A DNA stretch of 64,000 nucleotides. Origin: Heptranchias perlo (Eukaryota). Positions 8,477 to 31,035 of the stretch are shown piece after piece. Each line of letters begins with the position of its first letter. The stretch's first letter is position 1. Location of the stretch: NCBI RefSeq assembly GCF_035084215.1, contig NC_090340.1, positions 5,084,001 through 5,148,000 on the forward strand, written 5' to 3'. A program made the position numbers and the translations under genes. The notes beneath the pieces are model-generated. The model saw only the letters and a program-made list of their open reading frames with translations, was not told where the DNA came from and searched no databases.

Positions 8477-9824
8477 TTTTTTTTATTCGTTCATGGGATG
8501 TGGGCTTCGCTGGCGAGGCCGGCATTTATTGCCCATCCGTAATTGCACTTGAGAAGGTGGTGGTGAGCCGCCTTCTTGAACCGCTGCAGTCCGTGTGGTG
8601 AAGGTTCCCCACAGTGCTGTTAGGAAGGGAGTTCCATTATTTTGACCCAGCGACGATGAAGGAACGGCGATATATTTCCAAGTCGGGATGGTATGTGACT
8701 TGGAGGGGAACGCACAGGTGGTGTTGTTCCCATGTACCTGCTGCTCTTGTCCTGCTAGGTGGTAGAGGTCGCGCGTTTGGGAGATGCTGTCGAAGAAGCC
8801 TTGGCGAGTTGCTGTACTGCATCCTGTGGATGGTACACACTGCAGCCACTGTGCACCGGTGGCGAAGGGACTGAATGTTTAGGGTGGTGGATGGGGTGCC
8901 AATCAAGCGGGCTGCTTTGTCCTGGGTGGTGTCGAGCTTCTTGAGTGTTGTTGGAGGTGCACACATCCAGGCAAGTGGAGAGTATTCCATCACACTCCTG
9001 ACTTGTGCCTTGTAGATGGTGGAAAGGCTTTGGGAAGTCAGGAGGTGAGTCACTCGCCGCAGAATACCCAGCCCCTGACCTGCTCTTGTAGCCACAGTAT
9101 TTATATGGCTGGACCAGTTAAGTTTCTGTTCAATGATGAACCCCAGGTTGTTGATGGTGGGGGATTCGGCGATGGTAATGCCGTTGAATGTCAAGGGGAG
9201 GTGGTTAGACTCTCTCTTGTTGGAGATGGTCATTGCCTGGCACTTGTCTGGCGCGAATGTTACTTGCCACTTATGAGCCCAAGCCTGGATGTTGTCCAGG
9301 TCTTGCTGCATTAGGGCTCGGACTGCTTCATTATTTGAGGGGTTGCGAGTCGAAGTGAACACTGTGCAATCATCAGCGAATATCCCCATTTATGACCTTA
9401 TGATGGAGGGAAGATCATTGATGAAGCAGCTGAAGATGGTTGGGCCTAGGACACGGCCCTGAGGAACTCCTGCAGCAATTCCTTGGGGCTGAGATGATTG
9501 GCCTCCAACAACCACTACCATCTTCCTTTTTGCTTGGTATGACTCCAGCCATAGAGTTTTCCCCCTGATTCCCATTGACTTCAATTTTACGAGGGCTCCT
9601 TGGTGCCACACTCGGTCAAATGCTACCTTGATGGCAAGGGCAGTCACTCTCACCTCACCTCTGGAATTCAGCTCTTTTGTCCATGTTTAGACCAAGGCTG
9701 TGATGAGGTCTGGAGCCGAGTGGTCCTGGCGGAACCAAAACTGAGCGTCGGTGAGCAGGTTATTGGTGAGTAAGTGCAGCTTGATAGCACTGTCGACGAC
9801 ACCTTCCATCACTTTGCTGATGAT
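8477..9824 (-). mobile_element. CR1-group LINE, 5'-truncated, complete 3' end
   Basis: RT ORFs 9390-9653 and 8637-9389; ttttttttattcgttcatgggatg tail. Confidence 0.95.
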
Positions 9825-11027
9825 TTTCCTGTTTCCACACTTAATATATATTATAGAGCCATGACGGCCTGAAACCTCCGCACAGAAAACTCAGCTTTTT
9901 ATATGTTCACAAATAATCGGTAATTTTTTCAAAATTGTCAGTCCCTGTGAGTTATGAGAAGCTTGGGAAATTGATCATCGAATCTTTCCATTGAGGTTCT
10001 TCATCACCTTCAGATAATGTACAACGACCATTATTAACCAGTATAATGAGTTTCCCACTTCATCATACTTCACAATAAATACGCTTTCTTAAAAATTGAA
10101 ATTGTTGGGTGAAGGTCAAGGACAATGGATTGTTTGAAACGAGAAGTAGAGAAAACGAGATGAATACAAAAGCACCGATTAGGTGATGTCCCAGTACCCC
10201 AGCTTTATCGTGATTTCATCCAGACAAATTTTCAATGAATCTAATAGTGTTGGTTCTGCAGCCCCTGCTGAAAAAATATTTCAGTCGCTGACTTAAAGAG
10301 AAAACTTCCGGATACATCTTTATAAAAATATTTCTTATAATCTGCTTACGGCCTTGCATTTGTGTAGTCATGTAACCCTTTTTTCATTTTAGACTTAAGA
10401 GGAATGGACATATCTCCCGAGCTCTATGTGCAACCAAATCTTTAACTTTATCCTTACCAGAGTTGAAACGTGAAGAGGTGGTAGGAAGGAATGTGATATA
10501 TTTTTATTTCACCAGAACAAAATCTTACAAGTAGATTTATTACAGAAGAAAAACAAATAAAATACAAGAAGGCAAAAAAAAATCCCCATATTCGATGATA
10601 TGAATACTCTTTCCTGAGCTCATTCTGTTAACACTCGAATAACAGTGATACATTGGAAAGATCATTTCAGTTAAATGGATACGAAGAACATGAGAAAAGT
10701 CAAGAACCAGTAAAGACCAGTCGGCTCACTGAAGCTCATCGCCCAAGTACTCCAGCTCTCCCATTAGGGCATCCAGACACATTTACAACGCACTTAACAG
10801 TTTTGGTTCTGTTGCTCCTTTTGAAGAAGTATTCCAGCCTCTGAGTAAAAAACAACTATTTCTTATTTGTTTAGTTTATGTTTTGTCCTCTGGTATTCCT
10901 TCCGGGATTTAGTTTGAAACTCTGCATTCATCTTATCTGTACAATTTAATGTTTTATAGATCCCAGTAAGTTCCTAAATTAACTGCGTTCTTCCGAGCCT
11001 GCAGTGCTTGTCCTCCTCTACCAGCGC

Positions 11028-11485
11028 TCGCCTTGGATCAGTAATAGCATTCCCCTCTCTGATTCAGAAAGATAATATTTGAATACCCACTCAAAGACTC
11101 GAGCACATAATCTAGGCTGACACTTCAAGATAGTACTGAGGGATGCTGCACTGTCGGAGGATGCCTTCTTTCGGATGAGACGTTAAGTCAAGTCCCCGTC
11201 TGTCCTCTCAGATGGAAGTAAGTGATCCCATGACACTATTTCAAGAAGAGCAGCGAAGTTCTCCTGGTGTCCTGGCCAATATTCATCGACAAATCAACGT
11301 CACTAAAACAGTTATCTGATCACAGATGTTAATTGTTGTTTATGGGATCTTGTGTGCAAATTGGCTGCCCCGTTTGCCCTACTTTACAACAGTGACTACA
11401 CTTCAAAAGTACTTCAGTGACTATGAATCGTTTTGTGATGAGCACAGGTCGCAGAAAGCGCTACATTAATGCAGTTTTGTTCTTT
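11028..11485 (+). mobile_element. Deu-domain SINE
   Basis: gctgacact...gtactgagggatgctgcactgtcggagg...tttcggatgagacgttaa core. Confidence 0.85.
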
Positions 11486-12136: not shown

Positions 12137-12304
12137 TTACTTGGCTTTCCGTTCCTCGTAAATAACGTCTGCTCTTTGGTTTTTCATCCGAAGCTGAGCG
12201 TACTTCGTGCACTTATCCTTACGTGGAGGCTCTGCTGTTTTCTTGGAGCCTGTCATGTCTATTGAAGCGTAGGTCAGCTGGTTCTCGGGTGCCCTTTGCT
12301 TGGT
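12137..12304 (-). CDS. IgSF receptor exon 7: terminal exon with ITIM LTYASI, ITSM-like TKYAQL and VIYEE; stop TAA
   Basis: Acceptor ATTTCACAG, phase 0; TKQRAPENQLTYASIDMTGSKKTAEPPRKDKCTKYAQLRMKNQRADVIYEERKAK*. Confidence 0.85.
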   Translation of the reverse strand, partial: TKQRAPENQLTYASIDMTGSKKTAEPPRKDKCTKYAQLRMKNQRADVIYEERKAK

Positions 12305-12517
12305 CTGTGAAATCAATGTATGGGAATCTCATCAGTTCGATAATTTAACTGTATGTAGATTACTTTTAATCAAATCATTGGAATAACTAGAACTTCGAAG
12401 AATCAGGGCTAAATACAACAGATTACCAAAGATCTATTAAAGCTATTTCTTGCACCATCCCGCATGTCCGTTAATTACAGGTAATTTGTGTCTCTTTGTT
12501 CTGCTCCTCGACCCTAC

Positions 12518-12625
12518 CTGGGCATACACTGTCCTCTCTTGATGCTTTGGTCTTGGATCTTCCCGGGAATTGGTCATATCTAGTGCAGCATAAGGCGCCA
12601 TCTCATCCACTGTTGCCTGCATAGA
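12518..12625 (-). CDS. IgSF receptor exon 6: cytoplasmic exon with APYAAL and TVYAQ motifs
   Basis: Acceptor GCCTTTTAG (alternative in-frame ATGCAG 9 nt further), donor CAG|GTAGGG; SMQATVDEMAPYAALDMTNSREDPRPKHQERTVYAQ. Confidence 0.82.
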
Positions 12626-12720
12626 CTAAAAGGCAAAATTATATCTTGTTATGTTGTTGGGACAGATGTCGCGGTTGGACGCTCCCGGCGAAGAACGATG
12701 CAAGCAGGCCCGGAAATCAT

Positions 12721-12964
12721 GGGGGTGATTTTAAACCCCAAGAACGGGTGGGTTGGGAGCGGGCGGGAGTTGAAAATAGTTGTTTTTTGGGGTTGCAACC
12801 GCAACCCGGCTTTATTTCTGGGTTTAACTTGGGTGCGTAAAAGTACAGGCTTCCCACTGGGAATGCCAAGTCCAAACATTTTGCAGTTGCGACCCAAAAA
12901 AACAACTATTTTCAACTCCCACCCGCCCCCAACCCACCCGTTCTTGGGGGTTAAAATCACCCCC
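12721..12964. mobile_element. Young MITE (244 bp) with ~85-bp near-perfect TIRs, in intron 5 of the receptor gene
   Basis: GGGGGTGATTTTAAACCCCAAGAACGGGTGGGTTGGG... mirrored at the right end; flanked by AT (or CATG) on both sides. Confidence 0.9.
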
Positions 12965-13129
12965 ATGGGTCCAGAGTCCATCCATTAAATTAATGGATGG
13001 AAATTGAGTTGCAGCCGCCCACAACTTTCCGGCCGCGCTCCATGCCAGCGCCGTCAGCAGCCAAAAGGCGGAATCAGTCCTATTAACACAAATACTAAAA
13101 AAATACCTGGGGTGGGGCGGGGGGTGGTG

Positions 13130-13525
13130 TTGAAGCGAGATTTTTGTCTTTACCGTCTGGACTTTAAGCATCGTCAGGGCTAAGCACAGAAAGGAAAATC
13201 TGGCGGAGCCGATGCTGACAAGAGTACCATAAGCATTTCCTCACCATTGAAGTGAATGCAAAAAATATCCCGCACGCGCAACGATCCACCCCACCAGATT
13301 TCCCTTCCTGCGCTCCGCCCAAGCGATACTTAGGCAGTTAGGACGAAAATCTGCCCCCAAGATTCGGTGGAGCTACCGCCGGTCTCTCGCCATCACTTTG
13401 CTGGGTGATTACCGGAAGCCCCGGAGAAACCGTGTAATAAGCTGAAAACGTCCCTTAATTCCGTTCTCTGGCAGTTCCACGGGTATCCCGCCGAAGTGAC
13501 GGAAATCTCGTGAAATTTCTACGTC
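13130..13525. mobile_element. Further degenerate MITE-like palindromes
   Basis: gatttttgtctttaccgtct...aggcagttaggacgaaaatctgcccc with central ccattgaagtgaatg; second palindrome at 13361-13525. Confidence 0.5.
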
Positions 13526-13949
13526 AAGAAAATAAAGAAAATTAAGGGTTCAAAGTTCATTCCTGTAGTTCATTGATAGGCATAATCTGATTGAAATAAC
13601 CTGCAGCTGGCTAGGTTTGTAGACTTGAAGTTTCACTTTTGTGGCAACATAAACTAGCAAACCAATTTAGATCCTTCATGAAATTGATGTTTATACATAA
13701 GTGGAAACTGTTCGTAATTATTATACAATGAATAGAATTTAATTAACACAGGGAGACTTAGAAATGGATCTGAGGGTAACTTTCAGTAGTCAGGTCACTT
13801 TCAATATCCAGACAAATAAACAGCGAAAATAATTCTGGATTCAATAATCAGAACATGGAATGCAAGAGGTTGTATTAAAGCTTTAAAGTGAACTTCTGGA
13901 CTACACTTGGAATCCTACTTTCGGATTTCAATTCATCCACAATGCCACA

Positions 13950-14055
13950 TGTCTACATGTATGTCTATATCTACTACATTTTTATCAATTTATATCTATA
14001 TCTATTTATTTATGTATATTTATATATGTTTCTTTCTATATCTATGTCCATATCT
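13950..14055. repeat. AT-rich low-complexity (TA/TATC) tract
   Basis: tatatctatatctatttatttatgtatatttatatatg. Confidence 0.7.
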
Positions 14056-14149
14056 CACTTTCTGTGTAAGATCGACCCTGATTATTCAAACGCGGAGATG
14101 ACGTAGGACCAGGGAATCAAGTGGAGAACAAAGAATTGCAAAGAATTCC

Positions 14150-17100
14150 AAAGAATGTACAGCACAGGAACAGGCCATTCGGCCCCACAGGTCCATGCCC
14201 GTGTTTATGCTCCACTTGAGACCCCTCCCACCTTTCTCATCTAATCCTATCAACCCTTCTATTCTCTTCTCCCTCATTTGTTTCTCTAGCTTCATCTTAA
14301 ATCCATCTATGCTTGTCGCCTCAACTATTCCTTGTGGTAGCAAATTCCGCATTCTTACCATTCTCTTTGTGAAGAAGTTTCTGCTGATTTCCCTATTGGA
14401 TTTTTTGGTGACTAGCAAAATAACCTTGAGGACCTATCCATTAATGAGTGCCCTTTTCGAGTTTTTAAGTTACTCGTCAAGTAGTCATGACTATCCAAAC
14501 TGAAACCACAGGAATGGCTAGACCGTGAGCCCCGGATGTTACAAGGAAAAATACAAAAGAAGCAGAATTCATCTGCCATGGTACCGAGATACAGATCGGG
14601 TTAATTGATTATATCAATAGCTGCACGGGGGAAAACAGAAACAAAGACTAAACTAACATAAACTGCGAAGATCATAACATTGTCATGAATAACAACAACA
14701 AAATAGATTAACCGTTGGTCCAAGGAAGACCATAGGATAAAAGACCTGTCTTTATAAAATAATAAAACACAACCTACTGTAAATCAAGATACATAAAACT
14801 AAACTTAAAATAGGCCTTCGGGAAAACTAAAATGCATAAAACTAATAGTGACAGAAAGTTAAAACATGGAGTCGGATCCAAAATTGGCAATAACAAGGAG
14901 GGGAAAACCATAATGGACAAACCAACAATACGTAAGTTTGTCGTGACTGCACCAGCGTTATTCTTGGTGGGGTCCCTTGAATTGGGAAGTTGTTCGCTCC
15001 AATCTTCCCCGGTAGGAACTGTCCAGCGAATGATGGTCGATATGAAAACATTCCTCAAAGGTCTCAACGAGGCGGTAATAGCGGGACTGCAGGAGTCTGC
15101 CCAGGGTACGTTCCAGCTGATTACGTTTCGCTCGGGTCGCTGATTCCACAAGCGGGGATGTTGTTTCACTGGTCGTTCCCTTCCGGATTGGAGCAAACTC
15201 CCTGTTTTCCTCGTCCCCTTCTGAGGGTGGTGATCTCCTGACATCACCTATTCGTGTGTTCTTTGAACGGCCGTGAGATCGCACACGGTAAACGGCGGCA
15301 GTGAAACACACAAGAGTACCACGGTTGAGAGTTCTCTGAGCAGCCCATTTAGCCAATGTTTGTATGTTGTTGCCCGGCGGGACCACGAGGAGGCACGGCT
15401 CACTGCGACCGAGAACCCACAAGAAGGCCGCAGCCACGAAACTATGGCTCTCTTGGGAGACTAACGCCAAAAATAAATCCTAAGAGAGTCATAGTTAATC
15501 CCATATTGATGGCACCAAGTTATTGTCTCCCCCGCAAGTGGAAACATCTTGTCCATGTCTACCCCATCAAACCCTTTCATAATCTTAAAGGCCTCTATCA
15601 GGTCATCCGTCTCTCTTCTCTTTTCCAGAGAAAAGAGTCACAGCCGATTCAATCTTTCCTGATAAGTATAACATCTCATTCCGGTATCATCCTAGTAAAT
15701 CTTTTTCACCTTCTCCCGTGCCTCTATATCGTTTTTATAATATGTAGAACAGAACTGTTCGCAATATTCCAAGTGTGGTCTGACCGTGATTCTGTACAAG
15801 TTTTGCATAACTTCCCTGCTTTTCAATTCTATCCCTCTGGAAATGAACCCCAGTGCTTGGTTTGCTTTTTTATGGACTTATTAACCTGCATCGCTACTTT
15901 TAGTGATTTGTGTATCTGTACCCCTAAATCCCTCTGCTTCTCTACTCTGTTTTGACACTTATTTTCCAAGGAATATGTGGCCTCCTTATTATTCCTACCA
16001 AAATGTACCACCTCATATTTATCTATATTAAAATTCATTTTCCAATTACATGCCCATTCTGCAAGTTAACTTACGTCTTCCTGCATTTTGTCGGAGTCCT
16101 CCTCTGTAATAACTATACCGCACAATGTGATGTCGTCCACAAATTTTGAAATTGTACTTTCGATTCCCGAATCCAAATCGTTTATGTAAATGGTGAACAA
16201 CACTGGTCTCAGCAACGATCGTTGTGGAACACCGCTTCCCACCTTTTTGCCAGTTTGATTAACTACCTTTAACCCCCACTCTCTCCTTTCTGTTTGTAAC
16301 AAGCTTGCTATCGATTCTGCTACTTATCTCCTGACGCAACATGCACTGACCTTAGTCATGAGTTTACTATGTGGCACCTTATCGAAGGCCTTTTGTAAAT
16401 CCAAATCTATTACATCTACTACATTGCCCTTATCTACACTTTCTGTCGCTCCTTCAAATAATTCAATAATTTTGGTCAAGCATGACCTTCCCTTTTGGAA
16501 TCCGTGCTGACTATTCTTTATTGTCATTTTCAGTTTCTCGATGTTTCTCTATTACATCTTTGAGTAGGATTCCAATATCTTTCCGAATACTAACGTTAAG
16601 CTAATTGGTCTATAGTTCCCTGGACTTGTTTTATCTTCCTTTTTAAATATAGGGATCAGATTAGCTGTCCGCCAGTTCTCTGGCACTATTACTTTTTGTA
16701 ATGAATTTTTATATAGACACGTAAAAGTGCCTCTGCTATCTCTTCCTTAATTCTTTTAATATGCTTCTGGACCTGGGCATTTATCTTCTCTAAGATGGAT
16801 TACTTTATCAATTGCCTCCCCCTTTCTATCTTAAAGGTCTTTACATATTTTTTGATCTCTTCTTCTAAAGTCATGCCCACCATATTAGTCTCCCTGGTAA
16901 ATACTGAAGCAAAGTAATTAATTAATAATTCTGCCATTTCACTGTCGTTGCCTGTTAGTTTATCGTGTTTATCTATTAGTGGCCCGATCCCTAACCTGAT
17001 TTTGCTTTGATAGGAACATAGGAATATATGAACAGGAGTAGGCCATTCAGCCGCTCGAGCCTGCTCCGTCATTTGATAAGATCATGGCTGATCTGTGATC

Positions 17101-19420
17101 CAACTCCATATCCCTGCCTTTGACCCATATCCCTTAATACCTTTGGTTGCCAAAAAGCGATCTATCTCAGATTTAAATTTAGCAATTGAGCTAGCATCAA
17201 TTGCCGTTTGCGGAAGAAAGTTCCAAACTTCTACCACTCATTGTGTGTAGAAATGTTTTCTAATCTCACTCCTGAAAGGTCTGGCTCTAATTTTTAGACT
17301 GTGCCCCCGACTCCGAGAATCCCCAACCAGCGGAAATAGTTTCTCTCTATCCACCCTATCTGTTCCCCTTAATATCTTATAAACTTCGATCAGATCACCC
17401 CTTAACTTTCTAAACTCCAGAGAATACAACCCAATTTGTGTAATCTCTCCTCGTAACTTAACCCTTGAAGTCCGGGTATCATTCCAGTAAACTTATGCTG
17501 CACTCCCTCCAAGGCCAATATCTCCTTCCGAAGGTGCGGTGCCCAGAACTGCTCACAGTACTCCAGGCGCGGTCTAACCAGTTTTTTTTATAGCTGCAGC
17601 ATAATTTCTGCCCCCCTTGTACTCTAGTCCTTTAGATATAAATGCAAGTATTCCATTAGCCTTATTGATTATTTTCTGCAACTGTTCATGACACTTCAAT
17701 GATCTATGCACCTGAACCCCTAAGTCCGTTGGACATCCACTGTTTTTAACTTTTTACCATTTAGAAAGTACCCTGTTCTATCCTTTTTTGATCCAAAATG
17801 GATGACCTCACATTTGCCTACATTGAATTCCATTTGCCACAGTTTTGCCCATTCACCTAATCTATCAATATCCCTTTGTAATTTTGTGTTTTCATCTACA
17901 CAGCTTACAATGCCACCAATCTTTGTGTCATCGGCAAACTTAGATATGAGACTTTCTATGCCTTCATCTAAGTCGTTAATAAATATTGTGAATAATTGAG
18001 GCCCCAAGACAGATCCATGCGGGACTCCACTAGTCAAATCCTGCCAATGTGAGTACCTCCCCATTATCCCTACTCTCTGTCACCTTTCGCTCAGCCAACT
18101 TCCTAACCAAGTCCGAACTTTTCCCTCGATTCCATGGGCTTCTATCTTAGCTAACAGTCACTTATTTGGGACTTTATCAAATGCGTTCTGGAAGTCCATA
18201 TAAATATCATCCATTGACATTCCCCTGTCCACTACTTTAGTCACCTCTTCAAAAATGTAATTAGTTTTGTCAGGCACGACCTAACTTTCACATTTATTAT
18301 TTATGTGTCTGTAGAATAATTCGCTTTTTTTGATATTCCTTGATAATTTAATTTTGTGCTTTCTTTTTGCCTTCCTAATTGCTTTTATGACTTATTTCCT
18401 AACCCTTCTCTATTCCCTTTTGTCATCCTCTCGTTTGTTGTCTGCGTCTTTAGTGTATGCCTTTTTCTTCTGTTTCAATTTGGCCCTTATTTCTTTATTC
18501 ATCCATGGTGTGTCATTTCTGACTAGTTTTTTCTTGCTTTTCAGTGGGATATATTTCCCCTCGACTCTTGTGATCACCGTTTTAAACATTTCCCACTGCT
18601 GTTCTATTTCTTTCATTGTCAGTATTTTTTTCCAGTTTATTTTTCCAAGTTCCGTTCTCATCTCTTGAAAATCAACTTTTTCACCCAATTTATTACTTTT
18701 GCCTTTGTCTTACTTACATCCTTCTCAATCTTTACCTTAAACCTTTTTATGTTGTGATCACTATTGCCTAGATGTTCCTCTAAGCTTACTTTTCTTATTT
18801 GTTCTGGTTCATTTCCCATTACTAGATCCAGCAGTGCTTCCTCTCTTGTTGAGCTTTCTACACACTGAGTGAGAATCTGTCCTACACACATTGTAAAAAC
18901 TCTATTCCCTGTACCCCTTTTGTACCTCTTCTGGCCTACTCCTACTCCTATCTCTTATGGTCTCTTATGGACTTATGATCTCTTCTTGACAGTTTGTTGG
19001 GGATGGGTAAAATCTCCCATGATTATTATTCTATGTCCTTTACTCATTGCACATATTTGCCTACATATTTGTTCCTCTACCTCCTTGTTTCATTCACTTT
19101 TACATGTATTACTTTATCATTTTTCTTATTTATCACTCCCACTGTGTTGATTTCAGCTATTTTATTGTTTCCCGCCCCTCCCCCCCCCCCCCCATCGAGT
19201 TAAAGTCTTATTAACCACCCTATTTATCCTTTCCACTAGGACCTTGCTCCCAGCTGTTTCAGATGCAGCCCGTTCCAACTGTACAGCTCCTTCCTGTCAG
19301 TACTGGTGCCAGTGTCCCGTGAAAAAGAACCCGTCTTTCCCACTCTAATCCTTCAGCCACGAGTTTATTTCCTGATCTTGTCCCTATGCCATTTCGCCTC
19401 AATGCAGCGACTGAAGGGAA
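14150..19420 (-). mobile_element. Nested CR1 LINE fragments (older copy 14150-14415 plus 15495-17010 plus 18290-19420; second copy 17012-18290 inserted)
   Basis: QHGFQKGRSCLT, DLQKAFDKVPH, GVPHGSVLGP, FADDTK, RLRGDLIEVYKI, APE LLDLVMGNEP...SDHN. Confidence 0.9.
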
Positions 19421-19567
19421 TGCCGATTTCTTGCAGCATGTTTCCTCATGTTCTTAACATTGTAGCAAATTCGTCCACTCCACGATTTAAAAAATCGCGT
19501 CTGTGATCTGGGCACACGCGGGAAATGGAAATCGCTAACTTGGCACTGCGGGCCTGTGACTTTGTGC

Positions 19568-19915
19568 TTTTTTTTCAATTCATTCTGGAGATGCGCGCAT
19601 GCTGGCAAGGCTGGCATTTATTACCCATCCCTAGTTGCTTTGAGAAGTTAGTGGTGGGCTTGCTAGGGCACTTCAGAGGGCAGTTAAGTGTCAAACTCAC
19701 AGGTTTGGGACTGCAGTCACAAAGAGGTCATACTAGGTGAGTGCGGCAGGTTTCGTTCCCCGAAGGACATTAGTGAACCCGATGGGGATTTAAGACAATC
19801 CAATAGCTTCATGCTCACTCTTACTGGTACCAACTATATATACAGATTTTTAAAAACTTAATTCAAAATCTCAAACTGCAATGTAGGTTTTGAATTCGCA
19901 TTCTCTGAGTTTCGT
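19568..19915 (-). mobile_element. SINE-sized element: tRNA-like head and body of the 31662 LINE joined to that LINE's 3' tail
   Basis: Reverse complement contains ggttcactaatgtccttcggggaa...aactgccctctgaagtg followed directly by the cttctcaaagcaactagggatgggtaataaatgcc tail. Confidence 0.75.
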
Positions 19916-20319
19916 TCAGAGTTATTTAATGGACACAAAATCATGCACTGCGGTTGTACAATTGCGCAATATATTGCCCGCTGTGTTCAGGAGACAACAG
20001 CAGATAATTTTTCTATTCACTACAGTTGATGTTAACTTTTAAGCTATATGTTGATGGTTACTTTAACTATATGTTGCTTCACAATCTGGAGGTGACAATT
20101 CGAAGTCGGGTGCCTCTGACTTACTGTCACAGATACCGACAAGTCTAATGTTTCTACGCCTGTTTGTTGCATAATTACTGGTATCACTGCACTATTTTTG
20201 TATAAATCTTTACAACGACAGAATAACGCGGGCAAATCATTTCAATGCTAGTTTTACGCTCGGTCTCTTTTCTATATATTTACATTAGAAATATATTAGA
20301 ATAGATTGTGGAAACATAC

Positions 20320-20363
20320 CGGCTGTTTGCAATGGTCTGAGCTTCCATCGTCGTTCTGCGCTC
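20320..20363 (-). CDS. IgSF receptor exon 5: short cytoplasmic exon (GAQNDDGSSDHCKQP)
   Basis: Acceptor TTACCAG, donor CCG|GTATGT; 44 nt converts phase 1 to phase 0, as needed to join exon 6. Confidence 0.7.
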
Positions 20364-20444
20364 CTGGTAATGAACGAATTTCAAGACTTTACAATGAAGC
20401 ATTTCATTTGCTTAGAAATACACTAAGCGGTGGACTTAATGTAA

Positions 20445-21345
20445 GAACATAAGAACATAAAACAGAAGAAATAGGAGCAGGTGTAGGCCATACGCCCTCG
20501 AGCCTACACCGCCATTCAATAAAATCAGAGCTGATCTTCGAACTCAACTCCACTTTCCCGCCTGATCCCCATATCCCTTAATTCCCATAGAGTCCAAAAA
20601 TCTATCGATCTCATTCTTGAATATACTCAACTACTGAGCATCCACAGCCTCCTGGGTTGGAGAATTCCAAATATGCACGACCTTCTGAGTGAAGAAATTC
20701 CTCCTCATTTCAGTCTGGGACTTGATGGTTTGACTTATAGGGAGAGGTTAGATGGACTGGGACTTTTTCCCCTGGAGAGTAGGAGGTTAAGGGGTGATCT
20801 TATAGAAGTCTATAAAATAATGAGGGGCATAGATCAGGTAGATAGTCAAATTTTTTTCCCAAAGGTAGTGGAGTCTATAACGAGGGGACATAGATTTAAG
20901 GTGAGAGGGGAGAGATAAAAAAGGGTCCAGAGGGGCAATTTTTTCACTTAAAGGGTGGTGAGTGTCTGGAACGAGCTGCCAGAGGCAGTAGTAGAGGCGG
21001 GTACAATTTTGTCTTTTAAAAAGCATTTGGACAGTTACATGGGTAAGATGGGTATAGAGGGATATGGGCCAAATGCAGTCAATTGGGACGAGCTTAGTGG
21101 TATAAACTGGGCGACATGAACATGTTGGGCCGAAGGGCCTGTTTCCATGTTGTAACTTCTATGATTCTATGATTCGAAATGGTCGACCCCTTACCCTGAG
21201 ACTGTGCCCCCTAGTTTTAGACTCTCCAGTCAGGGGAAATAGCGTCTCAGCATCTATCCTCTCAAGGCCTCTCAGAATCTTATCTTTCAATGAGATCACC
21301 TCTCATTGTTCTAAACACCAGAGAGTATAGGCTCATTCTACTCAA
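20445..21345. mobile_element. CR1 3' fragment (-) interrupted by another CR1 3' end (+, 20716-21175)
   Basis: aagaacataagaacata tail; LGLFPLESRRLRGDLIEVYKIMRG; ttctatgattctatg tail. Confidence 0.9.
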
Positions 21346-21927
21346 TGTAAAATATTACATGATCTTGGTATCATATTTAAGGAATTGCTTAGATTCTGAC
21401 CTGTGATTAACAATAGGGACGGCATTGATTATCTACCGACGGGGTCTTGCACGCAGCAGCAGGATGATTGGAAAATCCCAGGAACACTGCCCACAATTCC
21501 ATGTCCATTGTCCTGAATGGATGGAAAGTCGCAGGCGATGAAAGATTGTTTTCCAATACAGATCCCGCTGAGTGCCAGTCTCAGCTGATGGCTGGGGGGT
21601 GCTGGGAAATTCCGCTGCATTTTACGCAGCATGTAAGAAATTCGAATCTACCTCCACACCAGTAGTGATAAAAATCATAGTACACAAATTAGTTGTTGAA
21701 ATTTGTATAAATGAAACAGACTGTGGTGAAAGTGAAGGGTCCCTTATACTTTTCAACCTAAGGGAAATCGATAATCACCAACAGTTCCAGTTCCTGTGTG
21801 ACAGCGTAACTGCACTTTGACCGTTAAGTTACAATCAACTCCTTTTCTATCTACATGTAACAGGAACTTCCCGCTCTCTCTTCGTAAGTTGTGTTTACAT
21901 TAATAAAAATACTAAATGATTACTTAC

Positions 21928-22038
21928 CTTTATTCTTCTTTGAGAGACATCGCTTCCCGATGATGAGAACTAATACCGCGAATACCAACCCGACCCCTGA
22001 ACATGCAGAAATCAGCAAGTAACGGGTGATCTCACCAC
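21928..22038 (-). CDS. IgSF receptor exon 4: transmembrane segment (YLLISACSGVGLVFAVLVLIIG then KRCLSKKNK)
   Basis: Acceptor CTGTTAG, donor AAAG|GTAAGT, 111 nt, phase 1/1; 22-aa uncharged hydrophobic stretch followed by basic stop-transfer residues. Confidence 0.9.
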
Positions 22039-22657
22039 CTAACAGATTTAGATGAAATATATAAATATGAAGTAGTACACTATTCAATTCAACAAGATCA
22101 TGACTTAAAAGATCGGAAATATTTTAATCAATTGTTGCTATTTTAGTACTTTTTATTTAAAGTATAGTTTTATGAAACAAAATAAAACATGAGCTATGTT
22201 TAATTTTTCATGCTTGTGAAATAAGTTATATTTACATTGTGTTGCTTTATACTCAAATCTGATTGCAATAAGACTTCGATATAAGTGTGATAATGATTAA
22301 TTTTTTACTTTATAAGAAGCTAACAACTGTTGCTAAAATTACAGATGTCTGCAGGTTGCGAGCACGGTTTAAGTGATGCAGGAAACAGCGGTCCAGCTCC
22401 GATGCGTTGCGACTTGGGGAACGGCAGGATACGGCTTGCATCCCGATATTGTCACAAGCGTCAGTTCCATATCTCGACCGTGACTCCCACTGGGGCAGGT
22501 GATGTTGAACTGCTGTTGCAGAGGCTTTGGAGCAGTACACCTGGCATAAATCCACAGATTTGATGATGGAGGTGGGGCCGGGTCTGGAGGGAGGGGGGTG
22601 GGGAGCGATCACAGTAATCGATTCTATTTGCAGGATAACTGAGATCTGCTATCTAAC

Positions 22658-22963
22658 CTATAGGGGAGGTGACAATGTGAGTGGCCGTGGCTGGAATTTG
22701 GAATGTAACGTGAGATACCAGCCAGGTATAAACAGTCCCGGTTGGAACAGGCGTATCATCCAAACGGCTGGAAGCTTCATATAGTCCATCGGTGTTGAGT
22801 TGTATAACGTTACTTATCTCTGTTGTAGTTTTGGTGCCATCTTTATACCAAGTGAAGGTGATATTCTCTGGGTAAAACGGAGATGTCGCGCACACAACTG
22901 TCAGAGACGCAGATGAATCCTTTTCATGTTCTTGAGAGGTAATTTTCAGCGGAGTTGGCGGAA
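22658..22963 (-). CDS. IgSF receptor exon 3: C1-set Ig domain (second canonical Cys replaced by Trp)
   Basis: Acceptor TTTTTCTAG, donor ATAG|GTTAGA, 306 nt, phase 1/1. C1 motifs [35 protein letters not shown] and YTWLVSH. Confidence 0.93.
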
Positions 22964-23895
22964 CTAGAAAAATTGAGGAAAGCAATCTTACTCGGGCATC
23001 AGTCAAGGTCATCAACAGTCGCTTTGTTTCGTCCGAATCCGGACAGCACGATGAGGGGAGATATTCACTGTGCGCTGTCGGTCGCGACATCGTAAACGGC
23101 ATCTTCGTAAATGTTCACATTATCTCGGGGGTAATTTTATCTTTTATCCCCGGGCGATAAACGGGTGACGGCTGATTGGAAAGAAAATCGAGCGGGATGT
23201 AAATCGGGCGGCCGATTCACTATCGCCTGTTTTGCGGTACCGCTGCCGACCAATTCCACCCCTTTAAGTATAGCAACTGATGATAAAGTACAAATTTCCC
23301 CAACGCGAGGGACTTTGACGCAAAGTTTCTAGATGATATCCTATTTACTGGAGGCTAATAAGATTATGAAAATATGGCGTGCGTGGCTCAAGTTACTGAG
23401 TGCGGACTTTAACTGTTAGTCACACCCGGCTTTCAACGATCTTAGCATATAGACCATTAAGTTACAAATGAGCGAATCTGAATATCTGAATTCTAATAGA
23501 AACGGTCAGCCCTCCCGAACCAATACAGACAAAATAAACCATGGAACTGGTTAAGATTTTGCTTACTTTGGCAGATCCGCGTTAGTATCCAGTGCTGTCG
23601 AGATATACATATCCTTAACGGATACTGCAATTTTAACTTAACATGCGTGTTGTATAAACGCTGACTGTGTATGTTTGGGCTAAAATTACGAACAGATAAC
23701 TCTTGTTGATTAATATTGCTGAAATAGTGTAATACCCATTAGCATGTAACGTGTAGCAGCCTACATGCAATTTGAATTTATAAATACAAAACGATTGGAA
23801 TTTAAGTTGCAATGTGAATCCTTCAAAGCACACCAGAGAAATGATTCGAATATTACAGTCACAGAAATCGCATTCGTCGCTATTTTCATACTTAC

Positions 23896-24216
23896 CCCAT
23901 ACTGCTAAATAGGATCCAGTTCCCTTTCCAGCTATTCTCCCTTGATGGGCGACAGTGCAATAATACAATCCCGAGTCCTTTACAGTCACATTGATTAACC
24001 GAAGGAAGCCGCTGAATTTAGTTTTGAAGCCAGTTACTTTTCTCTCATCAGGTCCTGTGCTGAGATATTTATTACCACCCTGTTTCCACCAGTGCACGTT
24101 CACACGTGGGCCGTCTTGAAAAAAGGGAATCGAGCAATGAAAGGAGACGCTTGTACCCAAGATTGCGCTCGCGTTTCCAGGGAGTTGAGTCACTTTGACC
24201 GAAGTATCGCCGGAGT
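23896..24216 (-). CDS. IgSF receptor exon 2: V-set domain with germline-joined J-like G strand
   Basis: Acceptor TTTCTTTTCCGATAG, donor TGGG|GTAAGT, 321 nt, phase 1/1. Translation VKVTQ...SFHC...VHWWKQ...LRLINVTVKDSGLYYC...GKGTGSYLAV has the canonical V-set Cys, Trp, DxGxYxC and a GxG motif. Confidence 0.95.
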
Positions 24217-24387
24217 CTATCGGAAAAGAAAATCAAAAACGAATTAGTGAGATTGTGTTACAGGAGAAAAAGCGGGAGGGTAAGGGAGTCAGGCAAAGAG
24301 TCCAAACGACAGTGATACATTTATATGAAAGTAAAGTATTTACTTGCGCGTTTTAGCCGATACGCGGGATAAATAAGAAATAGGTAC

Positions 24388-24442
24388 CTATGGAAATGAT
24401 TCCCAGAACAGAGATGCAATGAAGTACAACGCTCGTCAACAT
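24388..24442 (-). CDS. IgSF receptor exon 1: signal peptide (MLTSVVLHCISVLGIISI)
   Basis: ATG at 24442-24440; hydrophobic 18-aa leader; phase-1 donor ATAG|GTACCT at 24387, in phase with the V exon acceptor. Confidence 0.8.
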
Positions 24443-25864
24443 CCTGAGCCAATTAATCACTCGGAGCGACAGACCGTGAACTGGCTGATGGTTTGTAAGA
24501 ACACTGAGGGGCCGGAGTATGAAATACGTCACAATGAAGCATGATACTGTCAATGGATTCAGAAAATGCCCTTTTTTGTCTGTTTGGTGAGTTTTGCTGA
24601 AACAATTGTACATTCGCCAGAAGAGGGGGCAGCTCGGAATTTGAAGTTTGTGTCGCTGGACCGGCCCAGCCACGGGACCTTCCAACCGAAGGAAAACTGT
24701 GAAGAAAAGGTTATGCACGAGTTCCGGAATTGGAGATTATAATGTACTGCGCCTAGTATTTCCACGGGAGTTTTCTGACGGCAGACCGGTGGAATCCCAA
24801 TGAAGATTGGCATCCTGGTGTAGAATTTCCTTTGAATTTATTCGCCAAACCTGCACAATCTTAGCAGGGAGCAGTAAAACGGAGAGGGGACAGGACGTCT
24901 TGAAACACCGGCCCTTGCCCGTCACTGTGATTATCCCAAGAAGTGGAGGAGATCAGAAGAATTACAGGCACCTTATTGGCGGAGGTAAGGAAATGACGTG
25001 TGTAACAGATGATATCACTCATCCCAAATCCGTTATTTATGCCTGGATTACCCCGTCTGACGCTGGAGTCGATACCTGCAGCAGGGCATCGAGGTAGAAG
25101 TAACCTTTTAAAATATGTTTTTGGTTCGACAAGAACTGCCAGTAAGTTGGTAATTTATGAATTGGAGCCGGCCTGCAATCTATCTATGTATAATCTTTGG
25201 GGTAGAAGGGAATGTTTTCCCTTAGATCTCATACAAGCTTCACTATGGGTTTCCCAATGGGGTTTGTTCTCCACAGTATCTTAACCGGGGTATCATAAGA
25301 TTAGGGGATGAGCATCACAGGGAACATAGTTCATTGGGCATCACAGGATGAGAATAAGGCCTAGGCCAATCCTCCCTCCAAAAAATCTCTCAAGAGATAT
25401 AAGCGGGGAGACTTCACTGACAAAAGAATCTCTGGTTGAGAAGCCAGACCTGAAACCAGCTTCCACCTCTAGCACATCACTTAGTCTCGGCGGGGTCATT
25501 ATCCATGGGACCAGGACAGTTGGCTCCACCACACAGGTTGACATGATGTTCTTCCCCCAAAAGATCAGTTCCCTCGACAGGAGAAGTTTCCTCTCCCTCA
25601 ATGTACAGATTTGGCTGATAACATGCACAGGATCCTACGTTTCAATGTGAGATATGCTAGAAGTTGTTACGATGATTCATCCATTAAAATTCGACTGTCC
25701 CTGACCGCTACTGGGAGCAAAAATACGTCAACGGATGGCTTGCAGGTGACAAAACCTACCTCCTGTTCTCATTGAAAACGATCCCATGAAGCGTGGCTTG
25801 AACAACAGCAGAGGAGCGCTACAACGAGACAAATACCACTGAATGATTTGTCATTGAAATGTCA

Positions 25865-28945: not shown

Positions 28946-31035
28946 GCGAAGGGAGATTGAGACCATACAATGGCAACATGTTCCCGTAAAGGTCAAGGGT
29001 GGTTCCAAGAACTCCAGGCAACCTTGGATGTCAGGGGATATACGAGAATGGATTAGGAAAAAAAGGAGGGCTTTTGGCAGATACAAAAGGCTAAAGACGG
29101 AGGAAGCCCTAGAGGAGTACAAAAAGTGCAGGGGGATACTTAAAAAAGAAATTAGGAGATCAAGGAGGGGCCATGAAATAACACTGGCGAGCAAAATAAA
29201 GGAAAATCCGAAGATGTTTTATAAGTATATTAAGGGTAAGAGGATGACTAGGGAAAAAATAGGGCCCATTAGGGACAAAAATGGCAATCTGTGTGTGGAG
29301 CCGGCAGATGTAGGGGGGGTTCTAAATGAATTTTTTGCATCTGTTTTCACTATGGAGAAGGACGATCTAGACATAGAAATACGGCAGGGGGACTGTGATA
29401 TACTCGAACATCGAGCGGGAGGAGGTATTGGCGGTTTTAGCAGGCCTAAAAATGGATAAATACCCAGGCCCGGACGAAATGTATCCCAGGCTACTGTGTG
29501 AGGCAAAGGAGGAGATTGCGGGGGCTCTGACACATATATTCAGAACCTCTCTGGCCACAGGGGATGTGCCAGAGGACTGGAGAACCGCTAATGTAATACC
29601 ATTATTGAAGAAGGGGAGTAGGGAAAAACCGGGGAACAACAGGCCAGTGAGCCTAACATCAGTGGTAGGAAAATTATTGGAAAAAATTCTGAAGGACAAA
29701 ATTAGTCTCCACTTGGAGAAGCAAGGATTAATCAGGGATAGTCAACATGGCTTTGTCAAGGGAAGATCATGTCTGACTAATTTGATTGAATTTTTTGAGG
29801 GGGTGACTAGGCGTGTTGATGAGGGTAACGCAGTGGATGTGGTATACATGGATTTCAGTAAGGCCTTCGATAAAGTCCCCCACAGGAGACTGGTCAAGAA
29901 GGTACGAGCCCATGGAATCCAGGGTGCCTTGGCACTTTGGATACAAAACTGGCTTAGTGGCAGAAGGCAGAGGGTGATGGTCGAAGGTTCTTTTTGTGAC
30001 TGGAAGCCTGTGGCCAGTGGGGTACCACAGGGATCGGTGCTGGGTCCCTTGCTGTTTGTGGTCTACATTAATGACTTGGATATGAATGTGAAAGTTATGA
30101 TCAGTAAGTTCGCTGATGATACAAAGATTGGTAGGGTGGTAAATAGTGAGGAGGATAGCCTCAGTCTGCAGGACGATATAGATGGGTTGGTCAGATGGAC
30201 AGAACAGTGGCAAATGGAATTTAACCCGGAAAAGTGCGAGGTGATGCACTTTGGAGGGACTAACAAGGCAAGGGAATACACAATGAATGGGAGGACCCTA
30301 GGCAAGACAGAGGGTCAGAGGGATCTTGGTGTGCAAGTTCACAGATCCCTGAAGGCGGCGGAACAGGTAGATAAGGTGGTAAAGAAGGCATATGGGATAC
30401 TTGCCTTTATTAGCCGAGGCATAGAATATAAGAGCAAGGAGGTTATGATGGAGCTGTATAAAACACTGGTTAGGCCACAGCTGGAGTACTGTGTGCAGTT
30501 CTGGTCGCCACACTACAGGAAGGATGTGATCGCTTTGGAGAGGGTGCAGAGGAGATTCACCAGGATGTTACCAGGGCTGGAGCGCTTCAGCTATGAAGAG
30601 AGACTGGGAAGATTGGGTTTGTTTTCCTTGGAGCAGAGGAGGCTGAGGGGGGACATGATTGAGGTGTACAAAATTATGAGGGGCACAGATAGGATGGATA
30701 CTAAGGAGCTTTTTCCCTTCGTTGAGGGTTCTATAACAAGGGGACATAGATTCAAGGTAAAAGGCGGGAGGTTTAGAGGGGATTTGAGAAAGAACTTTTT
30801 CACCCAGAGGGTGGTTGGAGTCTGGAACTCACTGCCTGAAAGGGTTGTGGAGGCAGGAACCCTCACAACATTCAAGAAGCATTTGGATGAGCACTTGAAA
30901 TGCCATAGCATACAAGGCTACGGACCAAATGCTGGAATATGGGATTAGAGTCGACAGGGCTGATGGCCGGCGCGGACACGATGGGCCGAAGGGCCTCTAT
31001 CCGAGCTGTATGACTCTATGACTCTATGACTCTAT
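28946..31035 (+). mobile_element. Young 5'-truncated CR1 LINE with an open RT region (ORF 29395-30948, 517 aa)
   Basis: QHGFVKGRSCLTNL, YMDFSKAFDKVPH, GVPQGSVLGP, FADDTK; (GACTCTAT)n tail; one frameshift near 29410 separates it from upstream ORF2 sequence. Confidence 0.97.

What the first reader, a model, noticed from the sequence alone, without database searches (positions are those of the whole stretch)
12137..24442. Intact non-rearranging VJ-C1 inhibitory receptor: antigen-receptor-like ectodomain on a SIRP-alpha-like tail
Seen: seven GT-AG exons with matching phases (55+321+306+111+44+108+168 = 1113 nt) give an uninterrupted 370-aa type I protein L-V-C1-TM-Cyt. V and the J-like strand (YYC...GKGTGSYLAV) lie in one exon, and I saw no RSS beside it. 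Known: C1-set domains are largely confined to Ig, TCR, MHC, tapasin, SIRP and some B7 molecules; germline VJ domains with GxG occur in NKp30 and SIRP; mammalian SIRP-alpha is V-C1-C1. Inference: this V plus single C1 layout resembles a light chain or TCR chain wired to inhibitory motifs, as proposed for pre-RAG antigen-receptor ancestors. It may belong to a poorly described chondrichthyan checkpoint or NK receptor family.
Basis: partly seen in the sequence, partly recalled or inferred. Interest (0 to 1): 0.85.

Follow-up and report, generated by a model that had tools for sequence, protein, structure and literature searches.

The report
Shark SIRP-like receptor, one C1 domain
This is a real, transcribed shark gene for a cell-surface receptor with one variable-like and one constant-like antibody-type domain and an inhibitory tail; it belongs to a large, undescribed cartilaginous-fish family that looks like a shortened SIRP-alpha, not like a lone relic of the antigen-receptor ancestor.

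Summary
The seven-exon gene is real but lies on the minus strand (24442 to 12137). Pfam calls a V-set domain (the J-like GTGSYLAV strand is in the same exon, with no RSS nearby) and one C1-set domain.

Contigs of three RNA-like runs from one sample cover exons only. They show the e1-e2, e3-e4 and e4-e5 joints, an e2-e4 joint that skips the C1 exon, and read-through of the weak e3 donor.

The gene is no orphan. It belongs to a large family seen only in cartilaginous fish. RefSeq mostly auto-names it 'tyrosine-protein phosphatase non-receptor type substrate 1-like' (SIRP-alpha-like). The family profile aligns with a bird SIRP-alpha-like protein from leader to C-terminus (hhalign 99.5%). The tail modules match one to one, and one C1 domain is missing. 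The ectodomain alone is equally near light chains and UrIg2.

This copy has Trp where the C1 F-strand Cys is nearly invariant, so 'intact' holds for the reading frame only. The scan's first stage noted at least eight similar genes elsewhere in this genome. I found no paper on the family.

Verdict: a single-C1 SIRP-like inhibitory receptor, of moderate interest.

The parts
24388..24442 (-). Exon 1 (55 nt): ATG and hydrophobic leader MLTSVVLHCISVLGIISI, donor GTACCT, ends in phase 1
   Evidence: Joint 24388|24216 in an X1 contig. Aligns with the leaders of family proteins.
23896..24216 (-). Exon 2 (321 nt): V-set domain with the J-like G strand in the same exon
   Evidence: Pfam V-set 33.9 bits, ig 39.8 bits. 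AlphaFold model with pLDDT 90.5; Foldseek neighbours are VNAR, NCAM d1, TCR V-alpha, SIRP-alpha V, CD79b and NKp30. Invariant G20, C27, W42, Y84, C86, G98, G100 are all kept.
23900..23929 (-). J-like strand GKGTGSYLAV. GTGSYLAV fits G-x-G-T/S-x-L-x-V. The family's N-G-T sequon here reads K-G-T.
   Evidence: It aligns with the GSGTEVTV strand of a bird SIRP-alpha-like protein.
22658..22963 (-). Exon 3 (306 nt): one C1-set domain; weak donor GTTAGA
   Evidence: Pfam C1-set 42.5 bits, cut-off 21. Model with pLDDT 84.8; the top 49 listed Foldseek matches are MHC class II membrane-proximal domains. 96% identical to P0169.
22722..22724 (-). TGG (Trp) at the position of the canonical F-strand Cys of the C1 domain
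   Evidence: 170 of 174 aligned segments have Cys. An X1 contig covering 22498-22788 matches the window exactly. An X2 contig carries TGC (Cys) here.
22498..22657 (-). First 160 nt of intron 3, read through in one exact-match RNA-like contig. The frame stops two codons after the donor (...SPIG*). This is a possible soluble V-C1 form or unspliced precursor.
   Evidence: record 6, no differences; the other introns have no cover; frame.
21928..22038 (-). Exon 4 (111 nt): stalk, uncharged transmembrane helix YLLISACSGVGLVFAVLVLIIG, then KRCLSKKNK
   Evidence: Joints 22658|22038 (X2), 23896|22038 (X1, skips exon 3) and 21928|20363 (X1, X2).
20320..20363 (-). Exon 5 (44 nt), one of 23 open AG..44..GT candidates in the search region (21925-12640)
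   Evidence: candidates. Joint to exon 4 in two runs. 13 of 14 residues identical to P0169.
12518..12625 (-). Exon 6 (108 nt): first two-tyrosine module (APYAAL ... TVYAQ). A possible alternative acceptor lies 9 nt downstream, so that the exon would begin at 12616.
   Evidence: P0169 lacks the first three residues. Module similarity to exon 7: 23.1 bits, E 1e-5.
12137..12304 (-). Exon 7 (168 nt with TAA): second module with the canonical ITIM LTYASI (12260-12277) and TKYAQL (12191-12208)
   Evidence: Aligns with the last LTYADL...SEYASV module of a bird SIRP-alpha-like tail (E 0.01, 3 of 1000 shuffles reach the score).
16069..18079 (-). Reverse-transcriptase fragments inside the 7.7-kb intron 5 (not part of the gene product)
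   Evidence: Pfam RVT_1: 43.1 bits for 17723-18079 and 21.5 bits for 16069-16323.

Best explanation
The locus encodes a member of a multigene family found across cartilaginous fish. The family is a one-C1 version of SIRP-alpha: leader, germline-joined V(J) domain, a single C1-set domain, an uncharged transmembrane helix, and a tail of two duplicated two-tyrosine modules.

Inferred mechanism, by analogy with SIRP-alpha and not tested here: the V domain binds a cell-surface or pathogen ligand. Src-family kinases then phosphorylate the paired tyrosines, which lie 22-23 residues apart. The tandem SH2 domains of SHP-1/SHP-2 dock there and dampen activation of the cell that carries the receptor.

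This copy is transcribed and alternatively spliced. Besides the full form there is a form that joins V directly to the TM exon, and a read-through of the weak exon-3 donor that would end the protein after C1. It has lost the canonical C1 disulfide Cys (Trp instead). Its C1 domain may therefore be under relaxed constraint, while a near-identical copy or allele keeps Cys.
For: Gene structure and domains.

Transcription and joints.

Family:
- The C1 exon finds 447 proteins at E<=1e-3 among 1.84 billion representatives.
- Of the 90 of the best 150 that are under 700 aa, 79 score 78.9-140.9 bits on a family C1 model. The other 11 score at most 58.8.
- Every named family member I looked up is chondrichthyan: 10 of 10, 51 of 51, 34 of 34, 9 of 9 named. 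The commonest RefSeq name is SIRP-alpha-like.

SIRP link:
- P0023 against bird P0260: 70.1 bits, E 2e-17, from C1 through TM and the whole tail; V-C1 against V-d2 scores 59.7 bits.
- Family profile against P0260: hhalign 99.5%, E 4.3e-23, 346 columns from leader to C-terminus, with tail modules matching one to one.
- Tails alone: for 9 of 9 family tails, 0 of 1000 shuffles reach the observed score, z 5.3-10.8.
- C1 tree: the family clade (99/98) is sister to bird SIRP-alpha d2 plus lungfish SIRP-like C1 domains (96/84).

Exons 4-7 match the RefSeq model P0169: 14 substitutions and 1 indel over 239 residues of exons 3-7.
Against: - The ectodomain alone does not single out SIRP. Family profile against PDB: UrIg2 117.5 bits, a lambda chain 109.5, SIRP-alpha 97.1, many light chains 75-82. 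The family C1 model scores MHC II beta (53.5) and UrIg2-like domains (up to 50) as high as SIRP domains (37-47).
- In the tree the mammalian SIRP C1 domains and bird d3 fall elsewhere on long branches. No Ig, TCR, tapasin, beta-2-microglobulin or PRARP sequences could be included.
- In this copy only LTYASI fits the strict ITIM consensus. APYAAL, TVYAQ(T) and TKYAQL are degenerate.
- Exon 6 alone against the bird tail is weak (z 2.6).
- The contigs differ from the window by 0-3%, so isoforms cannot be assigned to this copy with certainty.
- The e3-e4 joint was seen only in the Cys-bearing variant.
- No binding or signalling was tested.
Confidence: 0.7

Rival explanations
1. This copy is a decaying or non-functional duplicate or allele. 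It is still transcribed, but its C1 domain no longer folds properly and its exon 3 is being lost from the mRNA. The function is carried by the near-identical Cys-bearing copy and other paralogues.
For: - Trp replaces the Cys kept in 170 of 174 aligned segments.
- A second nearly invariant C1 residue, L87, is Phe here.
- Family TEYAQL reads TKYAQL, and the family's NGT sequon reads KGT.
- The exon-3 donor is the weak GTTAGA.
- The exact-match contig reads through that donor, and another contig skips exon 3. The only e3-e4 joint seen carries Cys, Leu and an extra Pro, as P0169 does.
Against: - All 370 codons are open, with six usable splice sites.
- All seven invariant and seven nearly invariant V-domain positions are kept.
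- Exons 3-7 are 94% identical to P0169, with no frameshift.
- RNA-like contigs cover exons 1-5.
- Ig domains without the disulfide can fold (general knowledge, not tested).
- Skipping of exon 3 keeps the frame and would give a V-only inhibitory receptor.
Confidence: 0.25
2. The family is a surviving non-rearranging VJ-C1 lineage closer to the antigen-receptor stem (Ig light chain, TCR, UrIg) than to SIRP. The SIRP-like tail is convergent or was acquired by exon shuffling.
For: - The V-C1 unit of the family profile aligns as one stretch with lambda light chains at 65-82 bits, and UrIg2 is the top PDB hit at 117.5 bits.
- Structural neighbours of the V model include VNAR and TCR V-alpha ahead of SIRP-alpha V.
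- RefSeq names several members 'immunoglobulin lambda-1 light chain-like' or 'T cell receptor beta chain-like'.
Against: - The UrIg2 total sums three C1 domains; its best single stretch is 51.7 bits.
- Collinearity with SIRP-alpha covers the TM and the whole tail, module by module.
- The C1 tree puts UrIg2-like domains apart from the family and puts bird d2 and lungfish SIRP-like domains beside it.
- The Foldseek E-values for V are all about 1e-8, so they rank nothing.
Confidence: 0.1
3. [quoted passage not shown]
For: Only a lead. [quoted passage not shown] That PRARPs have a V, a C domain, a TM and a tail is my recollection and comes from no call.
Against: No PRARP sequence or text could be obtained. 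No bird protein of V-C1-TM length appeared among the family-like hits I looked up. The bird protein that did align end to end is SIRP-alpha-like.
Confidence: 0.05

Closest known systems
SIRP-alpha (SHPS-1, PTPNS1) of tetrapods
   Same: - Type I IgSF receptor whose N-terminal V domain has the J-like G strand in the same exon.
- C1-set domain(s) and an uncharged TM.
- A tail of two modules, each with two tyrosines (bird P0260: LTYADL..SEYACI..LTYADL..SEYASV).
- End-to-end profile alignment.
- RefSeq's commonest name for the family.
   Different: - One C1 domain, not two.
- A many-gene family in each cartilaginous-fish genome.
- Tail motifs of the YAxL/YAQ type, only partly fitting the strict ITIM consensus in this copy.
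- Ligand, SHP binding and synteny unknown.
UrIg and UrIg2 of elasmobranchs (PMC12227049, sections 4 and 7 read)
   Same: Non-rearranging single-exon VJ domain followed by C1-type domains, in the same animals. UrIg2 is the top PDB sequence hit of the C1 exon and of the family profile.
   Different: UrIg has three C1-type domains and only a secreted form. UrIg2 has nine to eleven C domains in sharks. Here there is one C1 and a tyrosine-motif tail. UrIg2-like C1 domains fall outside the family clade. The paper does not mention SIRP or ITIM.
Ig light chains and TCR chains
   Same: V-J-C1 order of the ectodomain. The family profile aligns across V and C of lambda chains at 65-82 bits.
   Different: V and J lie in one exon with no RSS. 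There is a TM and an inhibitory tail. The gene is germline-encoded and non-rearranging.
NKp30 (NCR3) and other VJ-type single-V receptors
   Same: Germline-joined VJ-type V domain. NKp30 is among the structural neighbours of the V model (rank 27).
   Different: NKp30 has no C1 domain and no ITIM tail (general knowledge, not tested here).
PRARP genes of chicken (Fu et al. 2019; only the title was seen, in a reference list)
   Same: Described as non-rearranging IgSF genes related to an antigen-receptor precursor. My recollection of a V-C-TM layout comes from no call.
   Different: Could not be compared: no sequence and no text were available.

Membership tests
SIRP family (SIRP-alpha type) | N-terminal V-set domain with a J-like G strand encoded in the V exon | tested here: met
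   Pfam V-set 33.9 bits, cut-off 26. GTGSYLAV aligns with GSGTEVTV of bird P0260. Model pLDDT 90.5.
SIRP family (SIRP-alpha type) | Two membrane-proximal C1-set domains (V-C1-C1) | tested here: not met
   One C1 exon only. tblastn with exon and family proteins finds no second C1 in the window. Bird P0260 has two C1 domains.
SIRP family (SIRP-alpha type) | Uncharged TM and a tail with four tyrosines in two paired motifs | tested here: met
   The TM has no charged residue. Exons 6 and 7 each carry a Y..(22-23 residues)..Y module. The modules are collinear with the bird tail. Only LTYASI is a strict ITIM.
SIRP family (SIRP-alpha type) | Binding of SHP-1/SHP-2 to the phosphorylated tail; binding of CD47 | not testable with these tools
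   Needs biochemistry.
SIRP family (SIRP-alpha type) | Orthology by tree and synteny | tested here: inconclusive
   C1 tree: the family is sister to bird d2 plus lungfish SIRP-like domains (96/84), but mammalian SIRP domains fall elsewhere and sampling is thin.
C1-set Ig domain | Match to the C1-set profile and fold | tested here: met
   PF07654 42.5 bits, cut-off 21. Foldseek's top 49 listed matches are MHC II C1 domains, TM about 0.7.
C1-set Ig domain | Canonical B-strand and F-strand cysteine pair | tested here: not met
   C24 is present. Position 80 is Trp, where 170 of 174 aligned segments have Cys.
Rearranging antigen receptors (Ig, TCR) | Separate V and J segments flanked by RSS | tested here: not met
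   V and the J-like strand lie in one 321-nt exon. There is no heptamer in or beside it and no full RSS near it.
UrIg / UrIg2 | VJ domain followed by three or more C1-type domains; no tyrosine-motif tail described | tested here: not met
   Here there is a single C1 and an ITIM-type tail. Architecture of UrIg and UrIg2 taken from PMC12227049, sections 4 and 7. 'ITIM' occurs 0 times in that text.
PRARP | Sequence relationship to chicken PRARP genes | not tested
   No PRARP sequence or paper text is held.

The most novel reading that the evidence does not exclude
The one-C1 layout may be the ancestral form of the SIRP lineage: a germline VJ-C1 inhibitory receptor that predates the second C1 of tetrapod SIRPs and stands close to the stem from which rearranging receptors took their VJ-C1 unit. 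It survives only in cartilaginous fish, as a large and fast-diversifying family. Within that family, this locus may catch a receptor in the act of shedding its C1 domain: the Cys-to-Trp change, the weak donor, and the in-frame V-to-TM transcript.
Probability: 0.2. Interest if true: 0.65.

Novelty: new variant of a known kind. Interest (0 to 1): 0.4.

Why it matters
If the reading holds, SIRP-type inhibitory receptors go back to the base of jawed vertebrates in a simpler V-C1 form. In cartilaginous fish they have expanded into dozens of genes. This gives comparative immunologists a defined family in which to test three things:
- what such receptors bind when no CD47 partner is known;
- whether long-tailed and short-tailed members form pairs;
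- how VJ-C1 units relate to antigen receptors.

For genome annotation it shows that one family currently carries at least ten unrelated automatic names: SIRP-alpha-like, SIRP-beta-like, lambda light chain-like, tapasin-related, NCR3LG1-like, CD276, PD-L1-like, MHC class II alpha-like and beta-like, and TCR beta-like.

For this locus alone the news is modest. It is one more member, with a damaged C1 domain.

Tried and rejected
Things that led nowhere or were uninformative:

- The plus-strand ORF list showed nothing; the gene is on the minus strand.
- The composition profile was not informative.
- The V exon against PDB sequences gave only generic Ig hits (FGFR, pIgR, light chains). Foldseek on the V model ranks many V-type and I-type domains at the same E of about 1e-8. 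I therefore dropped the idea of assigning the V domain to a family by fold.
- The C1 exon alone is as near to MHC II beta (31 bits) as to SIRP-alpha d3 (26 bits). The family C1 model likewise does not separate outgroups.
- I considered UrIg2 membership because it is the top PDB hit. I rejected it on architecture and on the tree.
- I considered a paralogue inside the window. tblastn with the exons and with nine family proteins finds only this gene.
- Exon 6 against the bird SIRP tail by BLASTP gave nothing useful.
- The sigma-70 promoter and terminator scan does not apply to a vertebrate gene.
- AATAAA search: the nearest minus-strand matches downstream of the stop are at 10536 and 10503, so I name no 3' end.
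- Lungfish P0110 turned out to be a fragment without V or tail, so I did not use it as a SIRP reference.
- Literature: ten searches found no paper on a shark SIRP-like V-C1 family. The library lacks most subscription journals. The first UrIg paper and the PRARP paper are not held.
They could name this family.
- I could not learn the organism's name (the runs are coded). The nearest database protein is from Heptranchias perlo.

Full report
OBSERVATION.

The plus strand shows nothing of the kind.
- e1 24442-24388 (55 nt)
- e2 24216-23896 (321)
- e3 22963-22658 (306)
- e4 22038-21928 (111)
- e5 20363-20320 (44)
- e6 12625-12518 (108)
- e7 12304-12137 (168, ending in TAA)

All introns are GT..AG and the phases are 1,1,1,1,0,0. 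The donors are GTACCT, GTAAGT, GTTAGA, GTAAGT, GTATGT and GTAGGG; the e3 donor is the weak one. The 44-nt exon was one of 23 open AG..44..GT candidates in the search region, 21925-12640, so on sequence alone it was the least certain piece.

Each exon was handled by itself, and full-length comparisons used natural database proteins.

DOMAINS.

- Pfam scores e2 as V-set (33.9 bits, cut-off 26; ig 39.8) and e3 as C1-set (42.5 bits, cut-off 21).
- AlphaFold models built on family alignments are confident: V has pLDDT 90.5 and C1 has 84.8.
- All 49 listed Foldseek matches of the C1 model are membrane-proximal domains of MHC class II.
- The V model matches VNAR, NCAM d1, TCR V-alpha, SIRP-alpha V, CD79b and NKp30, all at E about 1e-8. 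This confirms a V-type fold with a J-like G strand but ranks no family.
- The J-like strand is best read as G-T-G-S-Y-L-A-V, matching G-x-G-T/S-x-L-x-V.
- No RSS heptamer lies in or next to the V exon. No full 12-RSS exists in the window at up to 3 mismatches. The two 23-RSS-like matches lie at 11479 and 62250.
- e4 holds an uncharged TM helix.
- e6 and e7 each hold a two-tyrosine module, and the two exons resemble each other (23.1 bits, E 1e-5).

TRANSCRIPTION.

The one run search found three small runs of one sample, kept as contigs. Laid on 20200-24500, they cover the exons and not the introns. The exceptions are a repeat at about 20344-21351, with depths of 10^3 to 10^5, and 160 nt after e3. 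They behave as RNA.

Joints seen:
- 24388|24216 (e1-e2, X1)
- 22658|22038 (e3-e4, X2)
- 21928|20363 (e4-e5, X1 and X2)
- 23896|22038 (e2 joined to e4, X1, 30 letters on the short side). This skips the 306-nt C1 exon in frame.

One X1 contig (22498-22788, no differences from the window) runs through the e3 donor into the intron, where the frame stops after ...SPIG. One X1 contig leaves the genome at the e3 acceptor with 15 letters unplaced. That implies the e2-e3 joint but does not show it.

The contigs differ from the window by 0-3%. The X2 contig that shows e3-e4 carries Cys for Trp80, Leu for Phe87 and one extra codon, as the database protein P0169 does. Isoforms therefore cannot be assigned to this copy with certainty.

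THE FAMILY.

The C1 exon, scored against 1.84 billion representative proteins, finds 447 at E<=1e-3 and 135 at E<=1e-10. I built a model from the family's C1 columns. Of the 90 proteins under 700 aa among the best 150, 79 score 78.9-140.9 bits and 11 score at most 58.8, a clear gap. Typical members are 300-410 aa with leader, V (consensus GNGTGS), C1, TM and a tail of LTYAxL and TEYAQL-type motifs. Others have short tails.

Every member whose name I saw is from a cartilaginous fish, holocephalans included: 10 of 10 looked up, 51 of 51, 34 of 34, and 9 of 9 named (one further was unnamed). The word-based searches cannot prove absence elsewhere.

RefSeq's automatic names disagree with each other. 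The most frequent is 'tyrosine-protein phosphatase non-receptor type substrate 1-like'. Others are lambda light chain-like, SIRP beta-1-like, tapasin-related, NCR3 ligand 1-like, CD276 homolog, PD-L1-like, MHC class II alpha- or beta-like and TCR beta-like.

The nearest protein is P0169 (XP_067854359.1, Heptranchias perlo). It has 14 substitutions and one indel over 239 residues of exons 3-7. It confirms e5 (13 of 14 residues) and the e4-e7 order. It begins in what is intron 2 here, and it uses an e6 acceptor 9 nt further on.

The scan's own first-stage notes list at least eight similar VJ-C1-ITIM genes elsewhere in this genome, and two related items just outside the window. I did not check those.

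WHAT IT IS CLOSEST TO.

The ectodomain does not decide.
- The family profile against PDB sequences gives UrIg2 117.5 bits (three stretches, best 51.7), a lambda chain 109.5 (best stretch 65.1 across V and C), SIRP-alpha 97.1, SIRP-gamma 87.2, and many light chains at 75-82.
- The C1 exon alone gives UrIg2, then SIRP-alpha d3, with MHC II beta at a similar single-domain score.

The rest of the protein does decide.
- A natural family member (P0023) aligns with a bird SIRP-alpha-like protein (P0260, found) from C1 through TM and the whole tail (70.1 bits, E 2e-17). Its V-C1 aligns with V-d2 (59.7 bits).
- The family profile aligns with P0260 over 346 columns, from leader to the last residues (hhalign 99.5%, E 4.3e-23). 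The single C1 spans the place of d2 and d3, and the two tail modules fall on LTYADL..SEYACI and LTYADL..SEYASV.
- Tails alone: for 9 of 9 family tails none of 1000 composition-preserving shuffles reaches the observed score (z 5.3-10.8). The window's e7 is reached by 3 of 1000 and e6 by 26 of 1000. BLASTP of e7 gives E 0.01 on the last module, and e6 gives nothing.
- In a 55-row C1 tree (103 columns) the family is one clade (99/98). Its sister (96/84) is bird SIRP-alpha d2 plus lungfish SIRP-like C1 domains. UrIg2-like, MHC II beta and other C1 domains lie outside.
- Weaknesses of the tree: mammalian SIRP C1 domains and bird d3 also lie outside on long branches, and no Ig, TCR, tapasin or PRARP rows were available.
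- Within the family the window's C1 sits in a well-supported 11-row group (100/99) with sharks and rays. That subgroup therefore predates the split of sharks and rays.

THIS COPY'S DEFECT.

Codon 80 of e3 (22724-22722) is TGG. The aligned position is Cys in 170 of 174 segments from 157 proteins (F 2, V 1, W 1). In the 46-row alignment both C80 and L87 are at least 90% conserved, and both are changed here, to W and F.

The exact-match X1 contig carries the Trp codon, so it is not an assembly slip, unless the runs are the assembly's own sample. All seven invariant and seven nearly invariant V positions are kept.

Together with the weak e3 donor, the read-through and the e2-e4 joint, this suggests that C1 is less constrained than V in this copy. 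I put 0.25 on the copy being non-functional as a whole.

MECHANISM.

Shown: gene structure, domains, transcription, family membership, and collinearity with SIRP-alpha.

Inferred by analogy: ligand binding by V; phosphorylation of the paired tyrosines (22-23 residues apart here, 24-26 in the bird protein); docking of SHP-1/SHP-2; inhibition. In this copy only LTYASI fits the strict ITIM consensus. TKYAQL is ITSM-like with Leu, and APYAAL and TVYAQ(T) are degenerate.

LITERATURE.

- I read sections 4 and 7 of PMC12227049 (UrIg2). It describes non-rearranging VJ genes with three or more C domains and does not contain 'SIRP' or 'ITIM'.
- In PMC10751288 and PMC11599192 I saw passages only. They mention UrIg, NKp30, PRARP and SIRP as VJ-type genes, but not this family.
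- Ten searches found no description of a cartilaginous-fish SIRP-like V-C1 family.
- The PRARP paper and the first UrIg paper are not held, so the PRARP comparison is open.
- Supplements were closed and I did not see them. The gene tables of the two shark papers could bear on novelty.

SURROUNDINGS.

No other host gene was evident in the window. Long open frames elsewhere are reverse-transcriptase fragments (RVT_1 at 119 bits for 29377-30945; further pieces at 3412-4200, 8640-9389 and in intron 5).

VERDICT.

The gene is a single-C1 variant of the SIRP-alpha kind and a member of a large, automatically annotated but apparently undescribed chondrichthyan family. This copy has a damaged C1 domain. 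Interest is moderate (0.4).

Noticed in passing
window 21928-24216 (joint 23896|22038): An RNA-like contig of 916 letters joins the V exon directly to the TM exon, skipping the 306-nt C1 exon in frame. This would give a V-only inhibitory receptor. The contig has one difference from the window in exon 4, so its copy of origin is unsure.
   Followed up: partly
window 12616-12625: The first 9 nt of exon 6 end in CAG, and the near-identical RefSeq model P0169 lacks the three residues they encode. Exon 6 probably has two acceptors 9 nt apart.
   Followed up: partly
window 20344-21351: RNA-like contigs pile up here at summed depths of 10^3 to 10^5, with many loose ends. This is an abundant transcribed repeat inside intron 4, unrelated to the gene's exons.
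   Followed up: no
window 29377-30945 (+), 3412-4200 (+), 8640-9389 (-), 16069-18079 (-): Reverse-transcriptase fragments (Pfam RVT_1, up to 119 bits) fill much of the window, including the 7.7-kb intron 5. No other host gene was evident.
   Followed up: partly
family proteins P0074, P0094, P0061, P0021 (other species): Some short-tailed family members end their TM helix in ..IIVDH, ..IIVEH, ..IIMDH or ..ILVDH. An acidic residue at the inner end of the helix might mark activating or adaptor-coupled partners of the long-tailed forms.
   Followed up: no
family protein P0001 (Amblyraja radiata, 493 aa): This model has two nearly identical C1 domains in tandem (V-C1-C1). It is either a recent exon duplication that recreates the SIRP-alpha layout or an assembly or model artefact.
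   Followed up: no
window 23927-23929 (codon 96 of exon 2): In the J-like region 71 of 88 aligned relatives have Asn, which forms an N-G-T glycosylation sequon. The window has Lys (K-G-T), so the sequon is lost in this copy.
   Followed up: partly
RefSeq names of family members: One protein family carries at least ten different automatic names (SIRP-alpha-like, SIRP-beta-like, lambda light chain-like, tapasin-related, NCR3LG1-like, CD276, PD-L1-like, MHC II alpha- or beta-like, TCR beta-like). This is an annotation problem worth flagging.
   Followed up: yes
multi-C1 hits P0003, P0007, P0112 (other species): Proteins of 500-1100 aa with 3-10 C1 domains appear among the hits, named 'titin-like' or uncharacterized in Carcharodon, Hemitrygon and Chiloscyllium. 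Their layout recalls UrIg2 as described in PMC12227049. I did not verify this.
   Followed up: no
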